Below, piece after piece: positions 1 to 44,222 of a stretch of 64,000 nt of DNA. Made by a program: the position numbers and the translations under genes. Where the stretch lies: positions 1 through 64,000 of IMG/VR virus record IMGVR_UViG_3300047472_000309; one strand, given 5' to 3'. Within the stretch, counting starts at the first letter, position 1, and the number at the start of each line of letters is the position of its first letter. The notes under the pieces are model-generated. The model was not told the origin of the DNA, ran no database searches, and saw only the letters and a list, made by a program, of their open reading frames with translations.

Positions 1-785
1 CGATTCATAACGTTGTCATAGTTCATTCCCAATGCAGCCATGGCTTCAAATACATTAGAATAGCGCACACCCTCAATCGAAACAGGCGGAGATTTAGCTC
101 GCTTTGTCTTGATAAGGGAATCACTTAACTTCCGGCGCGCTTCCTCCGAAAGCACGTGACCTATACTTGCGTGTCTAAGTTTCTCTATGTGGCTGTCGGA
201 GAAAACAATTCCTTTTCTCGCAGCAGAAAGATTTTTACGGTGTTCCTCGGACAAAACTTTGCCGACGTTAGCCTGGCGAAGTTTTTCGCGCGTTACTTCT
301 GAGACGTAGCGACCCTGCATCGCAGCACGAATCTTTTCTTTTGTCTCAGGAGAAAGCTTCTTACCAATATTCATCCGGCGCAACGCATCTTTAACTTCGA
401 AGGAATGCGTCATACCTAACATGGCATATCGTGCATTCGGTGCGCGATTAAAAAGCACTCCCAATGGCAGTAACGTATCAAGTAGCTCCTGTTCGTAGGC
501 TTGGGCCTCTTCTTCGGTTTGCGTAACGATGGTCTGAAAATAAATCTCCGGATCATCGTCGTATGCCGCTTGAAGCTCAGGAATTTCGTGAATTCCTTTT
601 CGGAGCAGATCCCGATGCTTGCGATGTCGTTCGTAAAGATGGGTAGTGCTGCCAACGTACATTTTCCCACTTTTCACATGAGTGATGACGTAAACTGCAT
701 TCAGTCTGACACTTTTGCGAAGCTGCGGCATATCTTCGAACTTCTGATGAGTAGATGTCATCAGATCAGAAACGTGAATTGTCAT
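1..785 (-). CDS. GIY-YIG homing endonuclease with NUMOD3 repeats (3' end runs off the window)
   Basis: Absent from the ORF track because there is no stop in the window. Manual translation from ATG 785 gives ...NAVYVITHVKSGKMYVGSTTHLYERHRKH (GIY-YIG motif), repeated S-x-E-x-K/R-x-K-L/I NUMOD3-like units, and a C-terminal PVSIEGVRYSNVFEA HTH. AT-richer than its neighbours. Confidence 0.9.
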   Translation of the reverse strand, partial: MTIHVSDLMTSTHQKFEDMPQLRKSVRLNAVYVITHVKSGKMYVGSTTHLYERHRKHRDLLRKGIHEIPELQAAYDDDPEIYFQTIVTQTEEEAQAYEQELLDTLLPLGVLFNRAPNARYAMLGMTHSFEVKDALRRMNIGKKLSPETKEKIRAAMQGRYVSEVTREKLRQANVGKVLSEEHRKNLSAARKGIVFSDSHIEKLRHASIGHVLSEEARRKLSDSLIKTKRAKSPPVSIEGVRYSNVFEAMAALGMNYDNVMN

Positions 786-3131: not shown

Positions 3132-5042
3132 TTACCAGCGCGAGCTGAAGCCCGTGCGGCCCCAGCCAGCGCCTTGGTTCGACTGACCGCCGAAGCCTGC
3201 CGCGAACAGACCGGTTGCACCCGGCGCCATGAGCAGGCCGTTGGCGAACTGCGCCGTTGCACGCTCTTGACCCGCGACGTCGCCGAACGGGTATTGTGCA
3301 CGCAGGACGAGACCCGCATCCACGCAGCCCTTGGCCAGCGCTTCCATGAACGCACCGTCCAGCGTTGCACGACGTGCGAAACCCGTGAAGGTTGCATCGC
3401 CGACCAGACCCTGGATGATGTTCTTGCGACGCGCGAGACGCTGCGCGGGCGAGATTTGCAGATTGACGAACGTGTCGCTCCAGTCCTTGATGACCGTCGG
3501 GTCCTTCTCGCCGATCAGGTTCGCTACCGCGAGGTAGTCGATGTCGCGGATGTCGCGCTTGCGACCTTGCTGGTCGACGTACCAACCCAGGTGAATGCGG
3601 TTGTTGTTGTCGAACGCAACGCGGCCCGTGCCGTTCGTGTAGTGCTTCAGGAAGTTGCCGTTCGTCAGCGTCTGCGCTGCTTCGATGATGAACTCGTTGG
3701 CCTTCGGGCTGCCTTCAGCAGCAGCCGCGAACACCGAGTTCGACCAGGTCGACGGACCGCATTCCGGCACGTCGATCGAGAGCAGCAGGCCCGGACGCAC
3801 GAAAGCTTGCAGCAGCTTGTGCAGCGTGCCTTGTGCCGTGAACGCGTCCGACTTCGTGTCGATGCGCGCGCCGATGCCGTTCGCGTTGCCTTCCGGATTC
3901 GCTTCGATACCGATTGCACCGATGTCGTGCATGTCGATGCCTTGCGCGTAAGGACGCGGTGCGAAACCACGTGCCCAGGCGTTGCCGTCGCGCAGCGTGA
4001 GCGCCTGAACCAGCGCGAACAGCTGTGCCGGAACGGTCATCAGCTCGAGCGTTTCCAGGTGCGTCATCACGAAGTGCGTGATGTACAGCGGGTTGAACTG
4101 CTGTTGCTGCGCTTGACCCCACTGCGCGTACGGGTTCGCGGTCGGCGCGACCGGGTCCCACACGAGGTCGAGGAAGCCGCCGACTTGCGAGACCTTCGTC
4201 GCGCGTGCGTCTGCGTTGGCGCCCTGGCCGGTCGTGATTGCCGTGGCGATCAGGTCGATCATCACGTCGGTGCGGATCGGCTCGCCGACCGGGTCGACCA
4301 GTTGGTCGTGGTTGAACGCGACGCGCGCGGTCAGGTTCGAGTCGCGTGCTGCGCCAGCCAGGTTCAGGTCGCGGAAGTCCGTGCGCATGCGGTTCAGTTC
4401 GTGGTTCGCGGCAAACAGGGCGTTCGCGGCGAGCTGGTACACGAGCTGTTCGTCTGCGACGTCGAACGAACGCGGCACGACTTCGGCTTCAGCGTCGATC
4501 AGACGCGCGCCGTTGAAGGTACGGGCCACGGCATCGGCCACGACTTCGCGGAACTTGTCGTCCCACACGTCGCCGTCGACACGCTGGATTTCGACGTTCT
4601 GGCCGTTGATCTGGTCGTACTTCGGCGGGAACGGTTCGCCCGAGCCTGCGAGGATCAGCGTGTGGTACGCGACGCCCAGGTCCAGGTCGTTCTTGTCGAA
4701 CAGCGCCACGATGAGCGCCGAGCGCGCGATCGCCGGGTTGTTGTTCATGTCGAGCGGCAGCAGCTTGATCTCGAAAGCCGGGTTCGCCGACTTGTACGTT
4801 TCGATCAGTGCCTTCTCGAGCTTGACGAGCACTTCAGCGGCCGGGTTGCGACCCATCGGTGCGTTGCCCAGGCGGCCGAGCGAGCGGAAGCTGAAGCCCG
4901 CCGGTGCGGATTGTTGTTGCTGGTTCATGGTGCCTCGCGGTTGAGAGTTCTGGTTGTCCTTGGCCCGGCTGAAGCCTGCTGCCATTTGCGTTTCTGCCGG
5001 AGCTGCTGCTTGGCCTTCTTGGCCCGGTTGTTCGATTGCCAT
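3132..5042 (-). CDS. chmA: Chimallin, major phage nuclear shell protein (phiKZ gp54-like)
   Basis: 636 aa, the typical size. Directly upstream of nvRNAP beta'. Extreme codon bias suggests very high expression. Q/G-rich flexible N- and C-tails; early promoter upstream. Confidence 0.9.
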   Translation of the reverse strand: MAIEQPGQEGQAAAPAETQMAAGFSRAKDNQNSQPRGTMNQQQQSAPAGFSFRSLGRLGNAPMGRNPAAEVLVKLEKALIETYKSANPAFEIKLLPLDMNNNPAIARSALIVALFDKNDLDLGVAYHTLILAGSGEPFPPKYDQINGQNVEIQRVDGDVWDDKFREVVADAVARTFNGARLIDAEAEVVPRSFDVADEQLVYQLAANALFAANHELNRMRTDFRDLNLAGAARDSNLTARVAFNHDQLVDPVGEPIRTDVMIDLIATAITTGQGANADARATKVSQVGGFLDLVWDPVAPTANPYAQWGQAQQQQFNPLYITHFVMTHLETLELMTVPAQLFALVQALTLRDGNAWARGFAPRPYAQGIDMHDIGAIGIEANPEGNANGIGARIDTKSDAFTAQGTLHKLLQAFVRPGLLLSIDVPECGPSTWSNSVFAAAAEGSPKANEFIIEAAQTLTNGNFLKHYTNGTGRVAFDNNNRIHLGWYVDQQGRKRDIRDIDYLAVANLIGEKDPTVIKDWSDTFVNLQISPAQRLARRKNIIQGLVGDATFTGFARRATLDGAFMEALAKGCVDAGLVLRAQYPFGDVAGQERATAQFANGLLMAPGATGLFAAGFGGQSNQGAGWGRTGFSSRW

Positions 5043-39182: not shown

Positions 39183-40580
39183 TTAAGCCGTTTCGACTTC
39201 TTCCTCTTCCTCGAGCGGCTGATTTTCCAGCCACTTGTTGGAGATCACCTTGAACGAGCGACCGGTGACGTGGTTCTTCATTACGAGGCCTTCACGCAGC
39301 TTGGTGGACCCTGCAGCGAGCAGCGCTGACGGGCCGTCGGCGAGCTTCAGCAGTGCCTTGATATCAGCGGGCAGCTTGATGCGAGTCAGCTTCGGATCAA
39401 CCGGGATGTAATTCAAACCCAGGTAAGCAGCGATCGCTTTGGTTTCATCCGGCGTGAACCGGTAAGTGCCGTTGCCATAAGCACGGTACACAAAGAACTG
39501 ATCGACTGGGAAGCCTTCCGCACCGCCATTGAACGATGGCCCCACCATTTCACCCTGGACTGCAACGATCTTGCCGTGGGCGAATTCCAGCCCGATACCC
39601 TTGGCAATCGACACATCCATCATCAACGCCTTGTTCAGCGCTTTCAGATTGGCAGTAATGTCGTTGTTGATCATCCAACGCACGAGTGGTACACACTTCG
39701 GATCGTACTCGGTCTTCCAGGTCGGTACCGGACAGGCACCACCGCGCAGTCGCCGCGGCACGAAGCGCATCCAGTCCGACAGATAGACACGGAACGATTC
39801 TTTCCAGGTATAAGGGACGGTTTCGGTACGTAGCGAGAAGTTACGTTGCGCCAGACCAATGGAGCCGTCGTCCAGATCCTGGTAGGCCATGGCCGACTCA
39901 CCGTCGAGCTTGATCGAGCCCTCCCAGTCGTCGCCTTCTTTCACGAGCCGTGGGTATTCCTTGCCCAGGTTCTGTACGCGCTCTTCGTCTGACTTCACGT
40001 GACCACGCGGGAAGTCTTGCAGACCATCGACGAGAATCCCCTTGATCAACCGCATGCGTAGCTTCCACCACCAGCTGTTCGTACCGCGCCCGCCTGCACC
40101 AGATTCTTCGGCTAGACGCCGTAGGTATTGCTTGTACTCGACCGGGTTCACGTACTTCAGAATGCCGAGCTCCTGCGTGATGTTGACTTCATCTTCGCTA
40201 TGTACGGCCTGCGTGACCTTCATAAGCAACGCCGGAATGCTCTGCAGGTTCTTCAGCTGCATGAGTAGTCCCTGCGAGAGCGTCGAGCGCAGCTTGAGCG
40301 TCTTGATCACGGCATACTCCTTCTCGCCGTTTTCCATGTCCTTCTTCACCAGCAGGTACTTCTTATCGAAGTCTCCCCAGACCGGCGAGTCAAGCGGCAC
40401 GGCTGCATCGATCTCGAAGTACACAGCCGTCTGTCCGACCTGATACAGGTCTTTCTCGACCACGCACTCCCAACCCCCGACGACCGCGATCTCCAGCCGA
40501 TCGGCCTTCTTGATCGGCTTGATCTCATCGATCTTGACGATACGGGCGAGCGCCCGCGTTTCTTCTTTTACGAACGGCAT
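39183..40580 (-). CDS. RNA ligase (Rnl2/DRB0094-like) with N-terminal OB fold
   Basis: Start MPFVKEE; ADRLE..V.GW OB domain; nucleotidyltransferase motifs KLDGES, QGEMVG, REGLVMK and FKVIS. Confidence 0.9.
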   Translation of the reverse strand: MPFVKEETRALARIVKIDEIKPIKKADRLEIAVVGGWECVVEKDLYQVGQTAVYFEIDAAVPLDSPVWGDFDKKYLLVKKDMENGEKEYAVIKTLKLRSTLSQGLLMQLKNLQSIPALLMKVTQAVHSEDEVNITQELGILKYVNPVEYKQYLRRLAEESGAGGRGTNSWWWKLRMRLIKGILVDGLQDFPRGHVKSDEERVQNLGKEYPRLVKEGDDWEGSIKLDGESAMAYQDLDDGSIGLAQRNFSLRTETVPYTWKESFRVYLSDWMRFVPRRLRGGACPVPTWKTEYDPKCVPLVRWMINNDITANLKALNKALMMDVSIAKGIGLEFAHGKIVAVQGEMVGPSFNGGAEGFPVDQFFVYRAYGNGTYRFTPDETKAIAAYLGLNYIPVDPKLTRIKLPADIKALLKLADGPSALLAAGSTKLREGLVMKNHVTGRSFKVISNKWLENQPLEEEEEVETA

Positions 40581-40591
40581 TGTAATTCTCT

Positions 40592-40993
40592 TTAGATAAG
40601 TACGTCGCGAATAAACGGAACGCGAAACTGCGCCTGCTCTTTCAGCCAAGCGCGGGTCTGCCAGTAGTCCTTGTGCCAGATCGAATCAATCTTACAATCG
40701 TGATCGACACTCAGCGTAAAGCCAAACTCATCCCCCGTCTCTAACACAAAGACGAGATGATAGCCGAGCTGCCAGCATTGGTCCCACCATTCATCTTGCT
40801 GATCAATGATGGCGGGCGTGAAGTACCAGGAGGCGGCTTGCGCGCCAGAGTCAAACGACAGATGCAGTCGCTGAAGGGCGCGCAGATAACCCATCTGAAT
40901 CTCGAGCATCATGAAGTTATACGTTGCTTCATCACGCGCATGGTGATGCAAGAATAACTGCAAACGAGTATCGAGATTAAGATGACGTGCCAT
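40592..40993 (-). CDS. Hypothetical protein
   Basis: Start MARHLNL with GGAG RBS. Confidence 0.7.
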   Translation of the reverse strand: MARHLNLDTRLQLFLHHHARDEATYNFMMLEIQMGYLRALQRLHLSFDSGAQAASWYFTPAIIDQQDEWWDQCWQLGYHLVFVLETGDEFGFTLSVDHDCKIDSIWHKDYWQTRAWLKEQAQFRVPFIRDVLI

Positions 40994-41432
40994 CAGGGAG
41001 CTCCGGTTTCGGAAAATGATCTTTGGTGATCTCACCCATGATCCGTACGCGCCAACCCATGGATTCAAGATGATTCTTCGCGTGCTGGATGAATAAGTGA
41101 CGGTGGCAAAACACCCCCGCCGGGCAGTAGCACCCATACGCAGCGTATGGGTACACGGAGAGGCGATCCCACACTGCTCGATGCAGGTCACGGGACTCCA
41201 CCATCTTGTCTTCGTAAAGCTCCGTGTAGCTCTGCTCGTTCAGGCGCCCTTCCTTGTACGCCTTCACATTCTCCCAGTCGGGCGCAAATGCCAGGACCCC
41301 GTCCTTCGCAGTAGTATTAATGAGTTTTATTTTTTGCTTGCCACGAGCAGTTTCGATTTCCTCATTCTCGATTCGTCGCCATTGGGCTATCTGAATCGTC
41401 CAGAGGAAGAACTGGGGAGGTTTCTCTTCCAT
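40977..41432 (-). CDS. DUF488-like protein (intact copy with a replaced N-terminus)
   Basis: FAPDW and CYCPAGVFCHRHL motifs; AAGGA RBS inside the endonuclease gene. Confidence 0.75.
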   Translation of the reverse strand: MEEKPPQFFLWTIQIAQWRRIENEEIETARGKQKIKLINTTAKDGVLAFAPDWENVKAYKEGRLNEQSYTELYEDKMVESRDLHRAVWDRLSVYPYAAYGCYCPAGVFCHRHLFIQHAKNHLESMGWRVRIMGEITKDHFPKPELPDGTSS

Positions 41433-42198
41433 TTAATTCCTTGTAGATCCCTGCGTTAACGCGATTGGTGATCGTTGTGGTGGTTAGCCCAAGCTCTTTA
41501 GCGGCTAACCCTCGGCTGGCATAGACAACATCGTCTATAACGACTGGTTTAGCGCGATAAAGCATACCCAGGTGTTTGTTAAGCACAGTCTCAGGAGGAT
41601 CTTTTCTCCCTAGGGCTACCTCACTCAGTTTCTTTTTGTGTTCTTCACTGAGATGACCACCAAGTTTTGCTTGTCGCATAACCTCTTTGGCTTCTGGCGA
41701 AACTACGTGCGTTCGGCCAGTACTGCTGAGTCTGAATTTTTCGATTGCTTCTGGAGAATGTCTGTAGCCTTTGTTGTAGCCGGGATTATTCTGATGCTCC
41801 TGAAGCAAAGCTTGTCGCAATTTCTCGACATGTTCAGGAGACAGTTTTCTTCCTACTAATTTCTCCTTCATTCTTTTTATTGAATCCGGAGATTGGCCTA
41901 CAGAACAATGCCGCGCATCATCAGACAAGTTCAAGAAAAGCGGACTCCCATAGAACTCATCAATGATAGATTGTTCAAGGTCAAACGCCGCTTCTCTGTT
42001 CTCAACTTCTACAGACACGAAGTCAAAATTGGGATTACGATTATACGCTCGTTGAAATTTATAATTCGGATGCCGCTTATTCCTCAGAGCACTCCTATGT
42101 TTACTCTCTCGATAAACATCATCTTTCGTACTACCCGCATAAACCTCGTCAGTCTCGGGATTGTGAAAGATGTAGACTTTGTGGTTTTCTTCAGGCAT
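41362..42198 (-). CDS. GIY-YIG homing endonuclease with NUMOD3 repeats
   Basis: KVYIFHNPETDEVYAGST, HPNYKFQRAYN, repeated S-P/E-E units, PVVIDDVVYAS HTH; AT-rich insert. Confidence 0.9.
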   Translation of the reverse strand: MPEENHKVYIFHNPETDEVYAGSTKDDVYRESKHRSALRNKRHPNYKFQRAYNRNPNFDFVSVEVENREAAFDLEQSIIDEFYGSPLFLNLSDDARHCSVGQSPDSIKRMKEKLVGRKLSPEHVEKLRQALLQEHQNNPGYNKGYRHSPEAIEKFRLSSTGRTHVVSPEAKEVMRQAKLGGHLSEEHKKKLSEVALGRKDPPETVLNKHLGMLYRAKPVVIDDVVYASRGLAAKELGLTTTTITNRVNAGIYKELNGRETSPVLPLDDSDSPMATNRE

Positions 42199-42214
42199 CT
42201 CTCATAATCCCTTC

Positions 42215-42544
42215 TTAATGTCGGAACCCCAGCCCCACCCCTGACTTGGCCGTGGTGTCAATCAGCTTGATGTGATCCACATCCCGACCCATCAGGTAGG
42301 GGTTTTCAGCCCCAGCTGGGTCGGCGGTAGCCGGTGATGGGATCGATGACGTCGTGCTTGACGGTGCCGAATCCGAGGGTGGGGTCGACGATGCCGTCGG
42401 GGTTGACGTCAACGCGGCGTTCGATGTCGCGCTTCGTGCGCGCAGCAGCCTGTGCTGCCCAAGCTGAATTGTCCAGAGAAAGAACTGCGGGGTAGGACTT
42501 GGGGATGCTGGTGTGTCGGTAGACGAGATGGCGGATGCGTCCAC
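42215..42544 (-). pseudogene. Orphaned original 5' part of the DUF488-like gene
   Basis: PQFFLWTIQ...IKLIDTTAKSGV duplicates the N-terminus of 40977-41432, then stops just before the endonuclease. Confidence 0.7.
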
Positions 42545-43079
42545 AGGTCGGACCTCCCGTACGGTAGTTAAGGGATTCCCAGTCCGTGCGCTCGAGCACG
42601 TAACCGTTTGCGTCCAGCGACGCTTCGTCGAAGAGGACCGCGCCGACGACCGCGCCTTCGGGGGCCTTCTGGTTAAAGAGCTGGGCGATGTGGATGCGGC
42701 TCGCGAAGCCCATCAGGCTCGGCGTATTACTGCGTTGCACCAGACGGTGGATCGCGCTGTGATGATAGTCGACCATGAAGTGGCCGATCTCGTGGTTATG
42801 CAGCCCAGCCTGGTAATCGAAGTTGTCTTCCCGATACATCTTCGTGATGTCGTCGATATGACTTCCGTTCATGTCCAGCAGATGCGGTGCAACGTGAAAC
42901 TCTTTACAGGCGCTATACGCCTCTTCTGCGCAATGCAGCACCTGACCCTGCAAGACGTTCTTCAGACGGCTCAGAGCGTGGTTTAAGAGCGCCGGAGCAC
43001 CATCCTTGTACACGGGGCGACCCGCTTGGTCCAAAGTGATGATCAACTGCACGTTTTCTTTGCGGTTTTGTTCTTTCAT
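42306..43079 (-). CDS. Hypothetical protein, possibly a degenerate DHFR-like fold
   Basis: LIITLDQAG and RIHIAQL...GAVLF loosely follow the DHFR strand pattern; start may be GTG 43052. Confidence 0.5.
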   Translation of the reverse strand: MKEQNRKENVQLIITLDQAGRPVYKDGAPALLNHALSRLKNVLQGQVLHCAEEAYSACKEFHVAPHLLDMNGSHIDDITKMYREDNFDYQAGLHNHEIGHFMVDYHHSAIHRLVQRSNTPSLMGFASRIHIAQLFNQKAPEGAVVGAVLFDEASLDANGYVLERTDWESLNYRTGGPTCGRIRHLVYRHTSIPKSYPAVLSLDNSAWAAQAAARTKRDIERRVDVNPDGIVDPTLGFGTVKHDVIDPITGYRRPSWG

Positions 43080-43094
43080 GGTCCCTGCAACAAC

Positions 43095-43141
43095 AAAAAA
43101 TAAAGATGTCACAAACTCCCAGGGGCCGAAACCCCTGGGAG
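43095..43141 (-). terminator. Intrinsic terminator
   Basis: CTCCCAGGGG-CCGAAA-CCCCTGGGAG stem with an A-rich flank. Confidence 0.7.
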
Positions 43142-43182
43142 CGTTCTCAGCTACTGCCCCCATAAACGGAAGTGGCGCTCGC

Positions 43183-43668
43183 TTAGTCGCTCAGCGCCGA
43201 CGCGGCGATGTCCGTCAGGTGATCGCGCACCTTCTTGAATTCGCCACGCGATTGCGACGCGCCGTAGAAGTCGAGCTTCATCGAGCCCGTGCCGAACTTG
43301 GTGGTCGGCTCTTGGCCCGGTGCACGCACTTGCGACGAGCGCTCGAAGACGCCTTCGAACTTCGACTTGCCGACCGTCGGGAACACAGCTTGCACTTCGT
43401 TGACGGTCTTGTGCTTCTTGAAGAAGTCGACGCCGGTTTCGCCGAGTGCCAGGAACGATGCTGCGGCGAAGCGCGTGTTGTGGTTGTCGATCGCGAGCAC
43501 CGTGTCGGCGCTCACGCCTTCGGGCAGCAGTTCGACGTACACGCCCTTCAGCTTTTCCGGATCGGCCAAGCCAGTCTTCGGATCGAGGTGGATGTGCTTC
43601 TTGATCTTGTCGGCCAGTTCACGCGTTTCCGGCTTGAAGACGATGGATTCTTTAACAGTCGTGGTCAT
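43183..43668 (-). CDS. Highly expressed early hypothetical protein
   Basis: 161 aa, chimallin-like codon bias, AAACAAGGA RBS. Confidence 0.85.
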   Translation of the reverse strand: MTTTVKESIVFKPETRELADKIKKHIHLDPKTGLADPEKLKGVYVELLPEGVSADTVLAIDNHNTRFAAASFLALGETGVDFFKKHKTVNEVQAVFPTVGKSKFEGVFERSSQVRAPGQEPTTKFGTGSMKLDFYGASQSRGEFKKVRDHLTDIAASALSD

Positions 43669-43736
43669 GATACGTTTCCTTGTTTATCGGATTTAAGAAA
43701 GAGAGTGACTACTGGAGTCCTTGAGCTCAAGAACTA

Positions 43737-44222
43737 CTATTTGCTTCGAGCGTACTGGTTGCCGCCGGAAGGCTGCCGAGAAATCGTCGGGCGGCTCCCG
43801 TACGGCTTCCGCGGCGTTCTCACCTCAGTGCGGTTGGAGGGCACCGAGTTGAACTTGTCGACCAATGCTTCCACTGCCGCCGGGGCTACTGCCACCGGCG
43901 TGTCGATGCGCGCAGCTTTGAGCGCGGGACTGGAAAGGATGTGGCCGGAGATGTGGGTTTTGCCCTTTTGCAGGTCGCGACTGACTTGATCGCGCCCGCC
44001 GAAGACGATGAACTTGCCTTCGAGTTTGAAGAAACTGATCGTGCCGCCATGGAACTGCGGACAGTCTTGCGAGAGGTCGATCATGGCAAGCGCTGCGTCG
44101 GAGAAGTTGATGTCTTTCACCGCGACAGAAGCGATGCTACCGGAGCCAGCTTTGGCCATGACTTTGGTCAGCGAGTACTGCTGGTCTTTGAAGGTCAGGA
44201 TGACTTTCGAAATATCTTCCAT
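43737..44222 (-). CDS. Early hypothetical protein
   Basis: Likely start MEDISK below an early promoter; the track's longer start runs through the promoter. Confidence 0.7.
   Translation of the reverse strand: MEDISKVILTFKDQQYSLTKVMAKAGSGSIASVAVKDINFSDAALAMIDLSQDCPQFHGGTISFFKLEGKFIVFGGRDQVSRDLQKGKTHISGHILSSPALKAARIDTPVAVAPAAVEALVDKFNSVPSNRTEVRTPRKPYGSRPTISRQPSGGNQYARSK

What the first reader, a model, noticed from the sequence alone, without database searches (positions are those of the whole stretch)
40977..42544. Homing endonuclease that splits its target gene and supplies a replacement 5' end
Seen: upstream of the GIY-YIG gene is PQFFLWTIQL...IKLIDTTAKSGV followed by a stop, in GC-rich native codons (ATC AAG CTG ATT GAC ACC ACG). 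Downstream is MEEKPPQFFLWTIQI...IKLINTTAKDGV-LAFAPDW, where the duplicated part is AT-rich (ATA AAA CTC ATT AAT ACT ACT). It switches to GC-rich codons at about A-K-D-G-V (about 41310). The new start and RBS lie inside the last 71 nt of the endonuclease ORF, and a TATG sits just before the endonuclease. Inference: a splicing-free insertion strategy in which the element carries a recoded, cleavage-resistant N-terminus that restores the host gene.
Basis: partly seen in the sequence, partly recalled or inferred. Interest (0 to 1): 0.75.

Follow-up and report, generated by a model that had tools for sequence, protein, structure and literature searches.

The report
Endonuclease insertion carrying replacement gene start
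A selfish homing-endonuclease gene sits inside a gene of a giant soil phage and has brought a foreign copy of that gene's beginning, so the gene very probably stays whole without splicing; this mirrors a trick known from fungal mitochondria.

Summary
On the minus strand, a 941-bp, low-GC block (41296-42236) lies inside a DUF488-N3a gene of a phiKZ-like jumbo phage. The block holds an intact GIY-YIG homing endonuclease gene (HEG) and a foreign 5' end of the same DUF488 gene. The same five bases, GGGGT, lie at both junctions.

The imported 5' end has its own ribosome-binding site and ATG. It supplies five conserved family residues and gives a complete ORF, modelled at pLDDT 95. There are no intron signatures.

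Two points of the interpretation need revising. First, this HEG clade normally sits just upstream of an intact DUF488 gene. Three other phage contigs show this, one as an in-frame fusion, and none has a duplication. Second, the imported end is a different allele from a lower-GC donor, not a recoded copy.

The split probably arose because the native 5' end overlaps the upstream gene. Repair then had homology on one side only.

The closest precedents are T4 seg-type intronless homing and fungal mitochondrial mobile ORFs that carry foreign gene ends. Cleavage, immunity and lack of splicing are untested.

The parts
42306..43079 (-). Upstream gene, homologue of FLC9 gp33 (257 aa, no family match). 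It is intact, and its last ~80 codons overlap the native DUF488 5' end in another frame.
   Evidence: ORF list. There is no Pfam or PHROG hit. The C-terminal motif TGYRRPxW[GA] followed by a stop is conserved in most relatives (window, L008, L009, L010/L011, FLC9; lost in L007 by a 36-nt deletion).
42553..42558 (-). GGGAGG Shine-Dalgarno-like site inside the gp33-like gene, 8 nt upstream of the GTG start of the native long-form DUF488.
   Evidence: GGAGG plus a GTG or TTG start at the same spacing is conserved in L007-L010 and FLC9. Whether it functions as a start signal is inferred.
42215..42544 (-). Truncated native DUF488 5' fragment ORF (109 aa). Native sequence runs down to 42237. The last six codons and the stop come from the insert.
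   Evidence: The stretch 43300..42237 is 91.5% identical to L008. The 35 nt next to the junction match L008 at 34/35.
42237..42241 (-). Left copy of the GGGGT microhomology, at the left junction.
   Evidence: Three-way alignment. The HEG-less contig in run X3 joins 41295 to 42237, with 5 letters that fit either side.
41296..42236 (-). The 941-bp inserted cassette. It holds a 38-nt leader, the HEG, and the imported DUF488 5' end.
   Evidence: It is absent from L007, L008, L009, L010 and FLC9. It is also absent from contigs of runs X3 and X4, which skip exactly 941 nt. Its GC is 44.8%, against 56.2% for the window.
41362..42198 (-). GIY-YIG homing endonuclease gene (278 aa). Its last ~23 codons read through the start of the DUF488 gene in another frame.
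   Evidence: Pfam GIY-YIG E 1.8e-5, above its cut-off, with weak NUMOD3 and I-TevI DNA-binding hits. PHROG 314 'homing endonuclease' E 1e-31. I-TevI catalytic domain 1mk0 E 0.005. The catalytic residues are invariant across 8 family members.
41438..41442 (-). AAGGA ribosome-binding site, 5 nt upstream of the ATG of the chimeric DUF488 gene and inside the HEG ORF.
   Evidence: Read from the sequence. Function is inferred.
41296..41432 (-). Imported (foreign) 5' end of DUF488: residues 1 to about 46, ending in the right-hand GGGGT (41300..41296).
   Evidence: It matches L008 at 25/35 next to the junction, where the native copy matches at 34/35. GC3 is 0.51 against 0.68 for the native 3' part. 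It carries family-conserved T12, Q14, R19, T41 and G45.
40977..41432 (-). Chimeric, complete DUF488-N3a gene (151 aa): imported residues 1-46 joined to native residues 47-151.
   Evidence: Pfam PF22751 E 1.7e-5, 25.5 bits, just under the cut-off of 27. PHROG 2450 E 1e-21. 567 homologues at E<=1e-3. The AF2 model has pLDDT 95.3 and pTM 0.88, with the imported strand at residues 8-14. It is the only complete copy in the genome.

Best explanation
This is a free-standing, seg-like GIY-YIG homing endonuclease gene whose lineage lives immediately 5' of DUF488-N3a genes in phiKZ-like jumbo phages.

Proposed sequence of events:
1. During a mixed infection the enzyme cut a HEG-less DUF488 allele. The cut fell in or near the conserved …TAKSG-x3-FAP… coding block (inferred).
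2. The right-hand end of the break found homology in the donor's DUF488 gene. Repair synthesis copied leftwards through the donor's 5' end of DUF488 and then the HEG (inferred).
3. In this recipient lineage the native 5' end is a long form. Its first ~80 codons are overprinted on the end of the upstream gp33-like gene (shown). The donor therefore offered no homology on the left.
4. The left end was sealed non-homologously at a 5-nt microhomology, GGGGT (the junction is shown; the mechanism is inferred).

The result is a precise 941-bp insertion. The native 5' fragment stays in place, and it must, because it also encodes the end of gp33. The HEG follows it. The imported short-form 5' end, with its own ribosome-binding site and ATG inside the HEG's 3' end, is fused in frame to the native 3' two-thirds of the gene.

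The gene is thus kept whole at the DNA level and needs no RNA or protein splicing.

The intact target sequence no longer exists in the genome. The left junction has lost the 3' half of the site. At the right junction 11 of the 35 bases on the 5' side differ. This should protect the genome from its own enzyme (inferred).
For: HEG identity:
- Pfam, PHROG and I-TevI matches, with an invariant catalytic set Y9, G22/S23, R30, H34, H43, N45, E75, N90.

Sporadic presence at a fixed site:
- L007, L008 and L009 are 85-91% identical in the flanks, lack the cassette and read …TTAKSGVLAFAPDW….
- Run X3 holds HEG+ and HEG-less forms at equal depth (15.8 and 16). Run X4 holds only the HEG-less form. Both HEG-less contigs skip exactly 941 nt.

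Foreign origin:
- GC and GC3 drop across the cassette.
- The imported end lacks the ~50-residue loop of the native form.

Home position of the HEG clade:
- P0009 (56% identical) overlaps the start of a short-form DUF488 gene by 8 nt.
- P0010 (50%) is an in-frame HEG-DUF488 fusion on a phiKZ-like contig.
- P0011 (37%) lies 7 nt upstream of a DUF488-NADAR gene.
- None of these loci has an upstream DUF488 remnant.
- Many phiKZ-like DUF488 genes have no HEG at all.

Completeness of the chimera:
- Conserved T12, Q14, R19, T41 and G45 come from the imported part.
- The AF2 model has pLDDT 95.3.
- It is the only complete copy in the genome.

Native overlap with gp33:
- An internal GGAGG plus a GTG or TTG start is conserved in all relatives.
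- A 188-nt run is invariant among four relatives.
- An AF2 model of the long form shows a confident first strand, then a disordered stretch at about residues 41-90.

No intron:
- The Rfam scan at E<=1 gives nothing relevant.
Against: - No cleavage, homing or expression data exist. No RNA run was listed that holds the locus.
- The donor was not found. The nearest HEG is only 56% identical.
- There is only one independent instance of the split arrangement, so the order of events is reconstructed from a single end state.
- Tight HEG-DUF488 linkage, including one in-frame fusion, could also mean that the two proteins work together.
- The cut site is inferred only from the junction. T4 free-standing enzymes can cut hundreds of base pairs from their own gene (PMC2988022).
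Confidence: 0.7

Rival explanations
1. Dedicated cassette. The HEG and the 5' gene end form an evolved mobile unit. It regularly inserts inside DUF488 genes at the GGGGT site, needs homology on the 3' side only, and carries an immunity-conferring variant of the target.
For: The insertion is precise, with 5-nt microhomology. HEG and DUF488 5' end are physically welded in all four HEG-plus loci, by a 71-nt overlap, an 8-nt overlap, a 7-nt gap or an in-frame fusion. A rare Asp before the invariant Gly (…AKDG…) occurs in two of the four HEG-linked alleles. In the family at large the position is Ser in 89 of 110 members and Asp in 1 of 110.
Against: The three other HEG-plus loci show no split and no remnant. 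The Asp association was chosen after seeing the data and rests on two cases. Those two HEGs are only 37% identical to each other. There is only one independent split instance.
Confidence: 0.17
2. Functional module. The GIY-YIG nuclease and DUF488 act together, for example in nucleic-acid repair or in a conflict system. The pair was acquired as a unit by ordinary illegitimate recombination, without homing.
For: The adjacency is conserved across HEGs 37-56% identical, and one is an in-frame fusion. An RNA ligase gene lies two genes downstream.
Against: The architecture is the classical homing type: GIY-YIG, NUMOD3 repeats and an I-TevI-like helix-turn-helix. Relatives about 40% identical sit beside unrelated genes, one next to the major capsid gene and one next to a DNA polymerase gene. 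Most DUF488 genes in phiKZ-like phages lack the nuclease. Presence and absence vary among relatives with 85-91% identical flanks.
Confidence: 0.08
3. Self-splicing intron. The 941 nt are removed from the RNA, which restores the native long-form gene. The second 5' end is then irrelevant.
For: Precise removal would be in frame, but that holds for any precise insertion. I-TevI-type enzymes are often intron-encoded.
Against: No Rfam intron family matches at E<=1. Only 38 nt and 66 nt of the insert lie outside the HEG ORF, too little for a group I core. The only boundary that leaves a U at the end of the upstream exon makes the intron end in …GGGGU, so there is no terminal G. The imported end keeps a ribosome-binding site, an ATG, an open frame and the conserved residues. 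Related HEGs have no upstream exon at all.
Confidence: 0.03
4. Artefact or internal duplication. Either the arrangement is an assembly chimera, or it is a tandem duplication within this lineage that later diverged.
For: None beyond the repeat itself.
Against: Contigs from three runs are identical across both junctions, and so is a second IMG/VR contig. The composition shift and the missing 50-residue loop rule out a recent internal duplication.
Confidence: 0.02

Closest known systems
Free-standing seg-type GIY-YIG homing endonucleases of T4-like phages (intronless homing or marker exclusion; SegB, SegF, SegG), as reviewed in PMC2988022 and PMC2330249
   Same: The gene encodes a GIY-YIG enzyme that is not inside an intron or intein. 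It lies next to the gene it presumably cuts. Its presence among relatives is sporadic. Flanking donor sequence is co-converted along with the HEG.
   Different: Here the co-converted flank did not replace the recipient's sequence but was added to it. This leaves a partial gene duplication and places the HEG inside the gene. The host is a phiKZ-like jumbo phage. No cleavage or cross data exist.
Fungal mitochondrial mobile endonuclease ORFs (mORFs) that carry a foreign gene end: Allomyces macrogynus atp6, and Glomus sp. atp6, atp9 (GIY-YIG), cox2 and nad3 (PMC3630166)
   Same: An endonuclease ORF is inserted in a gene together with a diverged, horizontally acquired copy of the gene's end, and that copy is read in frame with the rest of the gene. 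The native end is left beyond the ORF as a remnant. The remnant is closer to relatives than the inserted copy is (34/35 against 25/35 here).
   Different: This is the mirror image. The 5' end is replaced, so new translation start signals are needed, and they lie inside the HEG's 3' end. It is in a phage rather than an organelle. The native remnant cannot be lost because it also encodes the end of the upstream gene.
Genes-in-pieces made by HEG insertion: mobE in nrdA of Aeromonas phage Aeh1, mobA in T4 gene 39/60, and a seg-like gene in gene 43 (PMC2988022)
   Same: A free-standing HEG lies inside a phage gene and no splicing occurs.
   Different: In those cases the two gene halves are translated separately and reassemble as subunits. 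Here one complete polypeptide is encoded downstream of the HEG, and the upstream piece is redundant.
I-TevI, the intron-encoded GIY-YIG endonuclease of the T4 td intron (PDB 1mk0 and 1ln0)
   Same: The catalytic domain and catalytic residues match, and the C-terminal DNA-binding module is of the same type.
   Different: No intron is present. The match to the I-TevI catalytic domain is weak, at E 0.005.

Membership tests
GIY-YIG homing endonucleases (I-TevI / Seg type) | GIY-YIG catalytic domain with the Tyr, Tyr, Arg, His, Glu and Asn set | tested here: met
   Pfam PF01541 scores 25.4 bits against a cut-off of 22.6. The alignment to I-TevI 1mk0 pairs Y9, Y19, R30, H34 and H43. Y9, G22, S23, R30, H34, H43, N45, E75 and N90 are invariant across 8 family members.
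GIY-YIG homing endonucleases (I-TevI / Seg type) | C-terminal DNA-binding module (NUMOD3 repeats and an I-TevI-like helix-turn-helix) | tested here: inconclusive
   NUMOD3 (E 0.007) and I-TevI_DNA-bd (E 0.007) both fall below their Pfam cut-offs in this protein. The precomputed domains of close homologues do list PF07460 and PF20987.
GIY-YIG homing endonucleases (I-TevI / Seg type) | Presence or absence at one fixed site among close relatives | tested here: met
   L007-L009, L010 and FLC9 lack it. HEG-less contigs in runs X3 and X4 skip exactly 941 nt.
GIY-YIG homing endonucleases (I-TevI / Seg type) | Site-specific cleavage of the HEG-less allele and biased inheritance in mixed infection | not testable with these tools
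   This needs purified enzyme and phage crosses.
Group I intron | Conserved catalytic RNA core | tested here: not met
   The Rfam 15 scan of 40000-44000 at E<=1 gave only one irrelevant weak hit. Only 38 nt and 66 nt of the insert lie outside the HEG ORF.
Group I intron | U at the end of the upstream exon and G at the end of the intron | tested here: not met
   The only boundary with an exon-terminal U is GGGGU|. With that boundary the intron would end in …GGGGU rather than G (sequence; junction).
Group I intron | Spliced RNA product | not testable with these tools
   No RNA run holding the locus was listed.
mORF-type gene-end replacement (fungal mitochondria) | Endonuclease ORF inside a gene, adjoined by a diverged second copy of the gene end that is in frame with the rest of the gene | tested here: met
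   Here it is the 5' end, not the 3' end.
mORF-type gene-end replacement (fungal mitochondria) | The displaced native end is closer to relatives than the inserted end is | tested here: met
   Against L008, the native copy matches 34/35 and the imported copy 25/35. The imported end also has a different length and composition.
mORF-type gene-end replacement (fungal mitochondria) | The hybrid gene is the expressed form | not testable with these tools
   No RNA or protein data are available.
DUF488-N3a (PF22751) | Profile match and the conserved CxC…CHR motif | tested here: inconclusive
   Pfam scores 25.5 bits against a cut-off of 27. However, homologues carry PF22751. C101, C103 and C109-H110-R111 are invariant. 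PHROG 2450 matches at E 1e-21.

The most novel reading that the evidence does not exclude
The HEG and the adjoining DUF488 5' end form a dedicated 'start-carrying' homing cassette. It can invade any DUF488 allele using homology on the 3' side only. It supplies new translation signals and an immunity variant of its own target (…AKDG… in place of …AKSG…). It may also borrow the displaced native start to drive its own translation. This would be a general splicing-free way for phage endonuclease genes to live inside genes.
Probability: 0.17. Interest if true: 0.65.

Novelty: new variant of a known kind. Interest (0 to 1): 0.5.

Why it matters
It shows, with empty-site controls from the same soils, a third way for a homing endonuclease gene to sit inside a phage gene without harm. 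The known ways are splicing (introns and inteins) and splitting the protein into subunits. Here a ready-made gene end is imported instead. I found this described only for the 3' ends of fungal mitochondrial genes.

The case also shows how gene overlap in the recipient can turn an ordinary flank co-conversion into a partial duplication and a chimeric gene. That matters for annotating jumbo phages. FLC9's copy of this gene is annotated only from an internal ATG. DUF488 proteins in Erwinia phages carry a misleading 'GIY-YIG' label.

The conserved pairing of this HEG clade with DUF488-N3a gives an experimentally tractable system, because FLC9 is a cultured relative with the empty site.

Tried and rejected
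- **Intron.** The Rfam scan at E<=1 found nothing relevant. The boundary bases do not fit a group I intron. Rejected.
- **RNA evidence.** No RNA run was listed, so reads could not be used to test splicing.
- **Donor search.** Nucleotide search of GenBank phages found only the flanks, in FLC9. The nearest HEG among 5.8 billion proteins is 56% identical. Cultured phages reach only about 30%. The donor was not found.
- **Target fragment in the leader.** I asked whether the 38-nt leader of the insert is a decayed piece of the target, which would point to an earlier intragenic stage. Its local alignment score is no better than shuffles, with 1148 of 2000 shuffles scoring as high. Rejected.
- **Upstream remnants elsewhere.** None were found in the other HEG-plus loci.
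- **Erwinia phages.** The DUF488 homologues in Wellington and Kwan are annotated 'GIY-YIG'. Wellington gp150 is a plain 116-aa DUF488 with no nuclease beside it (Kwan not inspected), so this looks like annotation carry-over, not another HEG-linked locus.
- **Fold search.** The search of the DUF488 model against the PDB gave no match at E<=0.001, so it says nothing about function.
- I reran it without that row.
Full report
**What is there**

All features are on the minus strand. In 5'→3' order they are:
- a gp33-like gene, 43079..42306;
- an ORF in another frame, 42544..42215 (109 aa), which overlaps the last ~80 codons of that gene and reads …PQFFLWTIQLGQ…IKLIDTTAKSGV, then GLGFRH and a stop;
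- a GIY-YIG endonuclease gene, 42198..41362 (278 aa);
- a 151-aa ORF, 41432..40977, whose ATG lies 71 nt inside the endonuclease ORF, 5 nt downstream of an AAGGA. It begins MEEKPPQFFLWTIQIAQ…IKLINTTAKDGVLAFAPDW…;
- a 133-aa ORF, and then an RNA ligase gene.

The window belongs to a 310,654-bp virus record with terminal repeats. The nearest cultured relative is Burkholderia phage FLC9. Related contigs carry phiKZ-type virion genes.

- The two N-terminal blocks are duplicated. BLASTP gives 11/16 identical at E 8e-7 for the first block, and the second block matches at 10/12.
- GC falls from 56% in the window to 44.8% across 42236..41296. GC3 is 0.41 in the endonuclease gene, 0.51 in the second 5' end and 0.68 in the rest of the gene.
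- The arrangement is not an assembly artefact. Contigs from three sequencing runs cross both junctions with no differences, one at depth 542. A second IMG/VR contig is identical.

**Empty sites**

Three IMG/VR relatives (L007, L008, L009) are 85-91% identical in the flanks and lack the block. FLC9 and L010 read the same with AAF in place of LAF.

Window 43300..42237 aligns to L008 3191..4254, and window 41330..41005 aligns to L008 4220..4545. So 35 nt of L008 match twice.

The native copy follows the relatives up to GGGGT (42241..42237) and then diverges. The second copy rejoins them after its own GGGGT (41300..41296). The insert is therefore 941 nt, with five bases of microhomology at its ends.

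Contigs from runs X3 and X4 skip exactly these 941 nt. In X3 the HEG-plus and HEG-less forms occur at equal depth, 15.8 and 16. The two kinds of phage therefore occur together in one sample.

**The endonuclease**

- Pfam GIY-YIG scores above its cut-off, with weak NUMOD3 and I-TevI DNA-binding hits.
- PHROG 314 'homing endonuclease' matches at E 1e-31.
- The I-TevI catalytic domain matches at E 0.005.
- Y9, G22/S23, R30, H34, H43, N45, E75 and N90 are invariant in an alignment with seven relatives.

The enzyme looks intact. The genome has three more GIY-YIG matches elsewhere.

**Where this endonuclease clade normally lives**

This is the result that changes the interpretation. The closest homologues among 5.8 billion proteins are as follows.

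| Homologue | Identity | Position relative to DUF488 |
|---|---|---|
| P0009 | 56% | On a low-GC contig; its stop overlaps the ATG of a short-form DUF488 gene by 8 nt |
| P0010 | 50% | A 405-aa in-frame fusion of the endonuclease and a complete DUF488. The contig is filed under Caballeronia arationis but carries phiKZ-type genes |
| P0011 | 37% | On a 273-kb contig, 7 nt upstream of a DUF488-NADAR gene |

- None of these loci has a second DUF488 5' fragment upstream.
- Relatives about 40% identical sit beside unrelated genes.
- Many phiKZ-like DUF488 genes have no endonuclease at all.

The clade is thus a free-standing homing endonuclease whose home is immediately 5' of DUF488-N3a genes. Its presence there is sporadic.

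**The imported 5' end is a different allele, not a recoded copy**

- Family members typically start only 2-10 residues before the WTIQ strand. The imported end has that canonical short form.
- It supplies conserved T12, Q14, R19, T41 and G45. The CxC…CHR motif lies in the native part.
- The chimeric protein is modelled with pLDDT 95.3 and pTM 0.88, and the imported strand (residues 8-14) is part of the model's strand set.
- It is the only complete DUF488 gene in the genome.

**Why the gene is split here**

In this lineage and in FLC9 the native gene is a long form.
- A conserved GGAGG, followed 8 nt later by GTG or TTG, lies inside the gp33-like gene.
- The frame then runs through the WTIQ strand and about 50 Ser/Thr/Pro-rich residues. 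These are encoded on the same DNA as the conserved C-terminus of gp33.
- The frame returns to ordered sequence at …IKLIDTTAKSGV…
- The AF2 model of the L008 long form shows a confident first strand (residues 21-27), a low-confidence stretch at about residues 41-90, and a confident remainder.
- Four relatives share a 188-nt invariant run (42608..42421) over the internal start region. Elsewhere about 18% of alignment columns vary.

A donor with a short-form gene offers no homology to the left of a break in this gene. I therefore infer one-sided homologous repair on the 3' side and microhomology joining at GGGGT on the 5' side. This adds the cassette instead of replacing the native 5' end. The native fragment also has to stay because it encodes the end of gp33.

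**Splicing**

No intron family matches at E<=1. Only 38 nt and 66 nt of the insert lie outside the endonuclease ORF. The one boundary that gives an exon-terminal U would leave an intron ending in U rather than G. No RNA run holding the locus was listed, so the absence of splicing rests on sequence alone.

**Self-immunity**

This is inference. The left junction has lost the 3' half of the site. At the right junction 11 of 35 bases on the 5' side differ between the copies.

There is one lead. The imported end and the HEG-linked allele in L079 both have Asp before the invariant Gly. The family has Ser there in 89 of 110 members and Asp in 1 of 110. The position was picked after seeing the data, and only two cases support it.

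**Comparison with known systems**

The element works like T4 seg-type intronless homing, in which flanking donor DNA is co-converted (PMC2988022, PMC2330249).

The outcome is the mirror image of fungal mitochondrial mORFs. These carry a foreign C-terminal gene end and leave the native one as a remnant (PMC3630166).

It differs from the genes-in-pieces cases, such as Aeh1 nrdA/mobE, where both halves are needed (PMC2988022).

My literature searches turned up no phage case of 5'-end replacement. They were not exhaustive.

I rate it a new variant of a known kind, with interest 0.5.

Noticed in passing
window 42306-42544 (minus strand); also L001 3767-3999, L008 3947-4182: The native long-form DUF488 gene appears to start at a conserved internal GGAGG plus GTG or TTG inside the gp33-like gene and to overlap it by about 240 nt in another frame. 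The overlapped part encodes a roughly 50-residue low-confidence loop between the first two strands. A 188-nt run (42608..42421) is invariant among four relatives.
   Followed up: partly
L001 (FLC9, LC667451) 3767-4336: FLC9 gp32 is annotated as only 89 aa, starting from an internal ATG (locus 4073-4339). The open frame with the conserved N-terminal strand and start signals extends about 100 codons further upstream into gp33.
   Followed up: partly
L007 about 1760-1800: One relative has a 36-nt deletion that removes the gp33 stop and its conserved RRPSWG end. The gp33 frame then runs on to …GYRSGCRSH. The DUF488 frame stays open.
   Followed up: no
window 40594-41004: A 411-nt segment holding a 133-aa ORF with no family match and 51% GC is present in the window, L007 and L009. 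It is absent from L008, L010 and FLC9. Where present, it changes the DUF488 C-terminus from …DHFPKP to …DHFPKPELPDGTSS. This is a second insertion/deletion difference next to the same gene.
   Followed up: partly
L075 6001-7218 (GCA_001544975 contig FCOG02000011): A 143.7-kb contig filed under Caballeronia arationis carries phiKZ-type virion genes and an in-frame GIY-YIG-DUF488 fusion ORF (405 aa). It is probably a jumbo-phage contig within a bacterial assembly.
   Followed up: partly
L090 2516-2866 (Erwinia phage Wellington gp150); also Kwan: A plain 116-aa DUF488 homologue is annotated 'putative GIY-YIG catalytic domain protein'. The label was probably carried over from the fused Caballeronia protein.
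   Followed up: partly
L079 3402-4307: A DUF488-N3a domain is fused to a NADAR domain (301 aa), directly downstream of a related HEG in a 273-kb phage contig. Together with the RNA ligase gene near the window's copy, this hints at a nucleic-acid repair or ADP-ribose-related role for the family.
   Followed up: no
window 42150-42215 (minus strand): The truncated native fragment ORF stops 16 nt before the HEG ATG. A 4-codon mini-ORF (ATGAGAGATGCCTGA) overlaps the HEG start. A predicted RNA hairpin pairs the HEG start region with codons about 10-15 (z = -2.4). This may mean translational coupling or control of the HEG.
   Followed up: partly
window 41362-41432 (minus strand): The HEG ORF extends about 23 codons past the family's usual end (…GIYKE) by reading the DUF488 start region out of frame. 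A TAA directly followed by the DUF488 ATG sits in another frame at that point. This suggests that an ancestral stop-start abutment was lost.
   Followed up: no
window 75-698 (minus strand); G000 67986-68204 and 75447-75710: The same genome has three further GIY-YIG matches. One is at the very start of the window (30% identical), and one lies inside a 765-aa open frame. Their contexts were not examined.
   Followed up: no
runs X3 and X4 laid on window 40500-43300: HEG-plus and HEG-less relatives, about 88% identical, occur at equal depth in one rhizosphere sample. Only the HEG-less form is seen in a soil sample. This is a natural setting in which mixed infection and homing could occur.
   Followed up: partly
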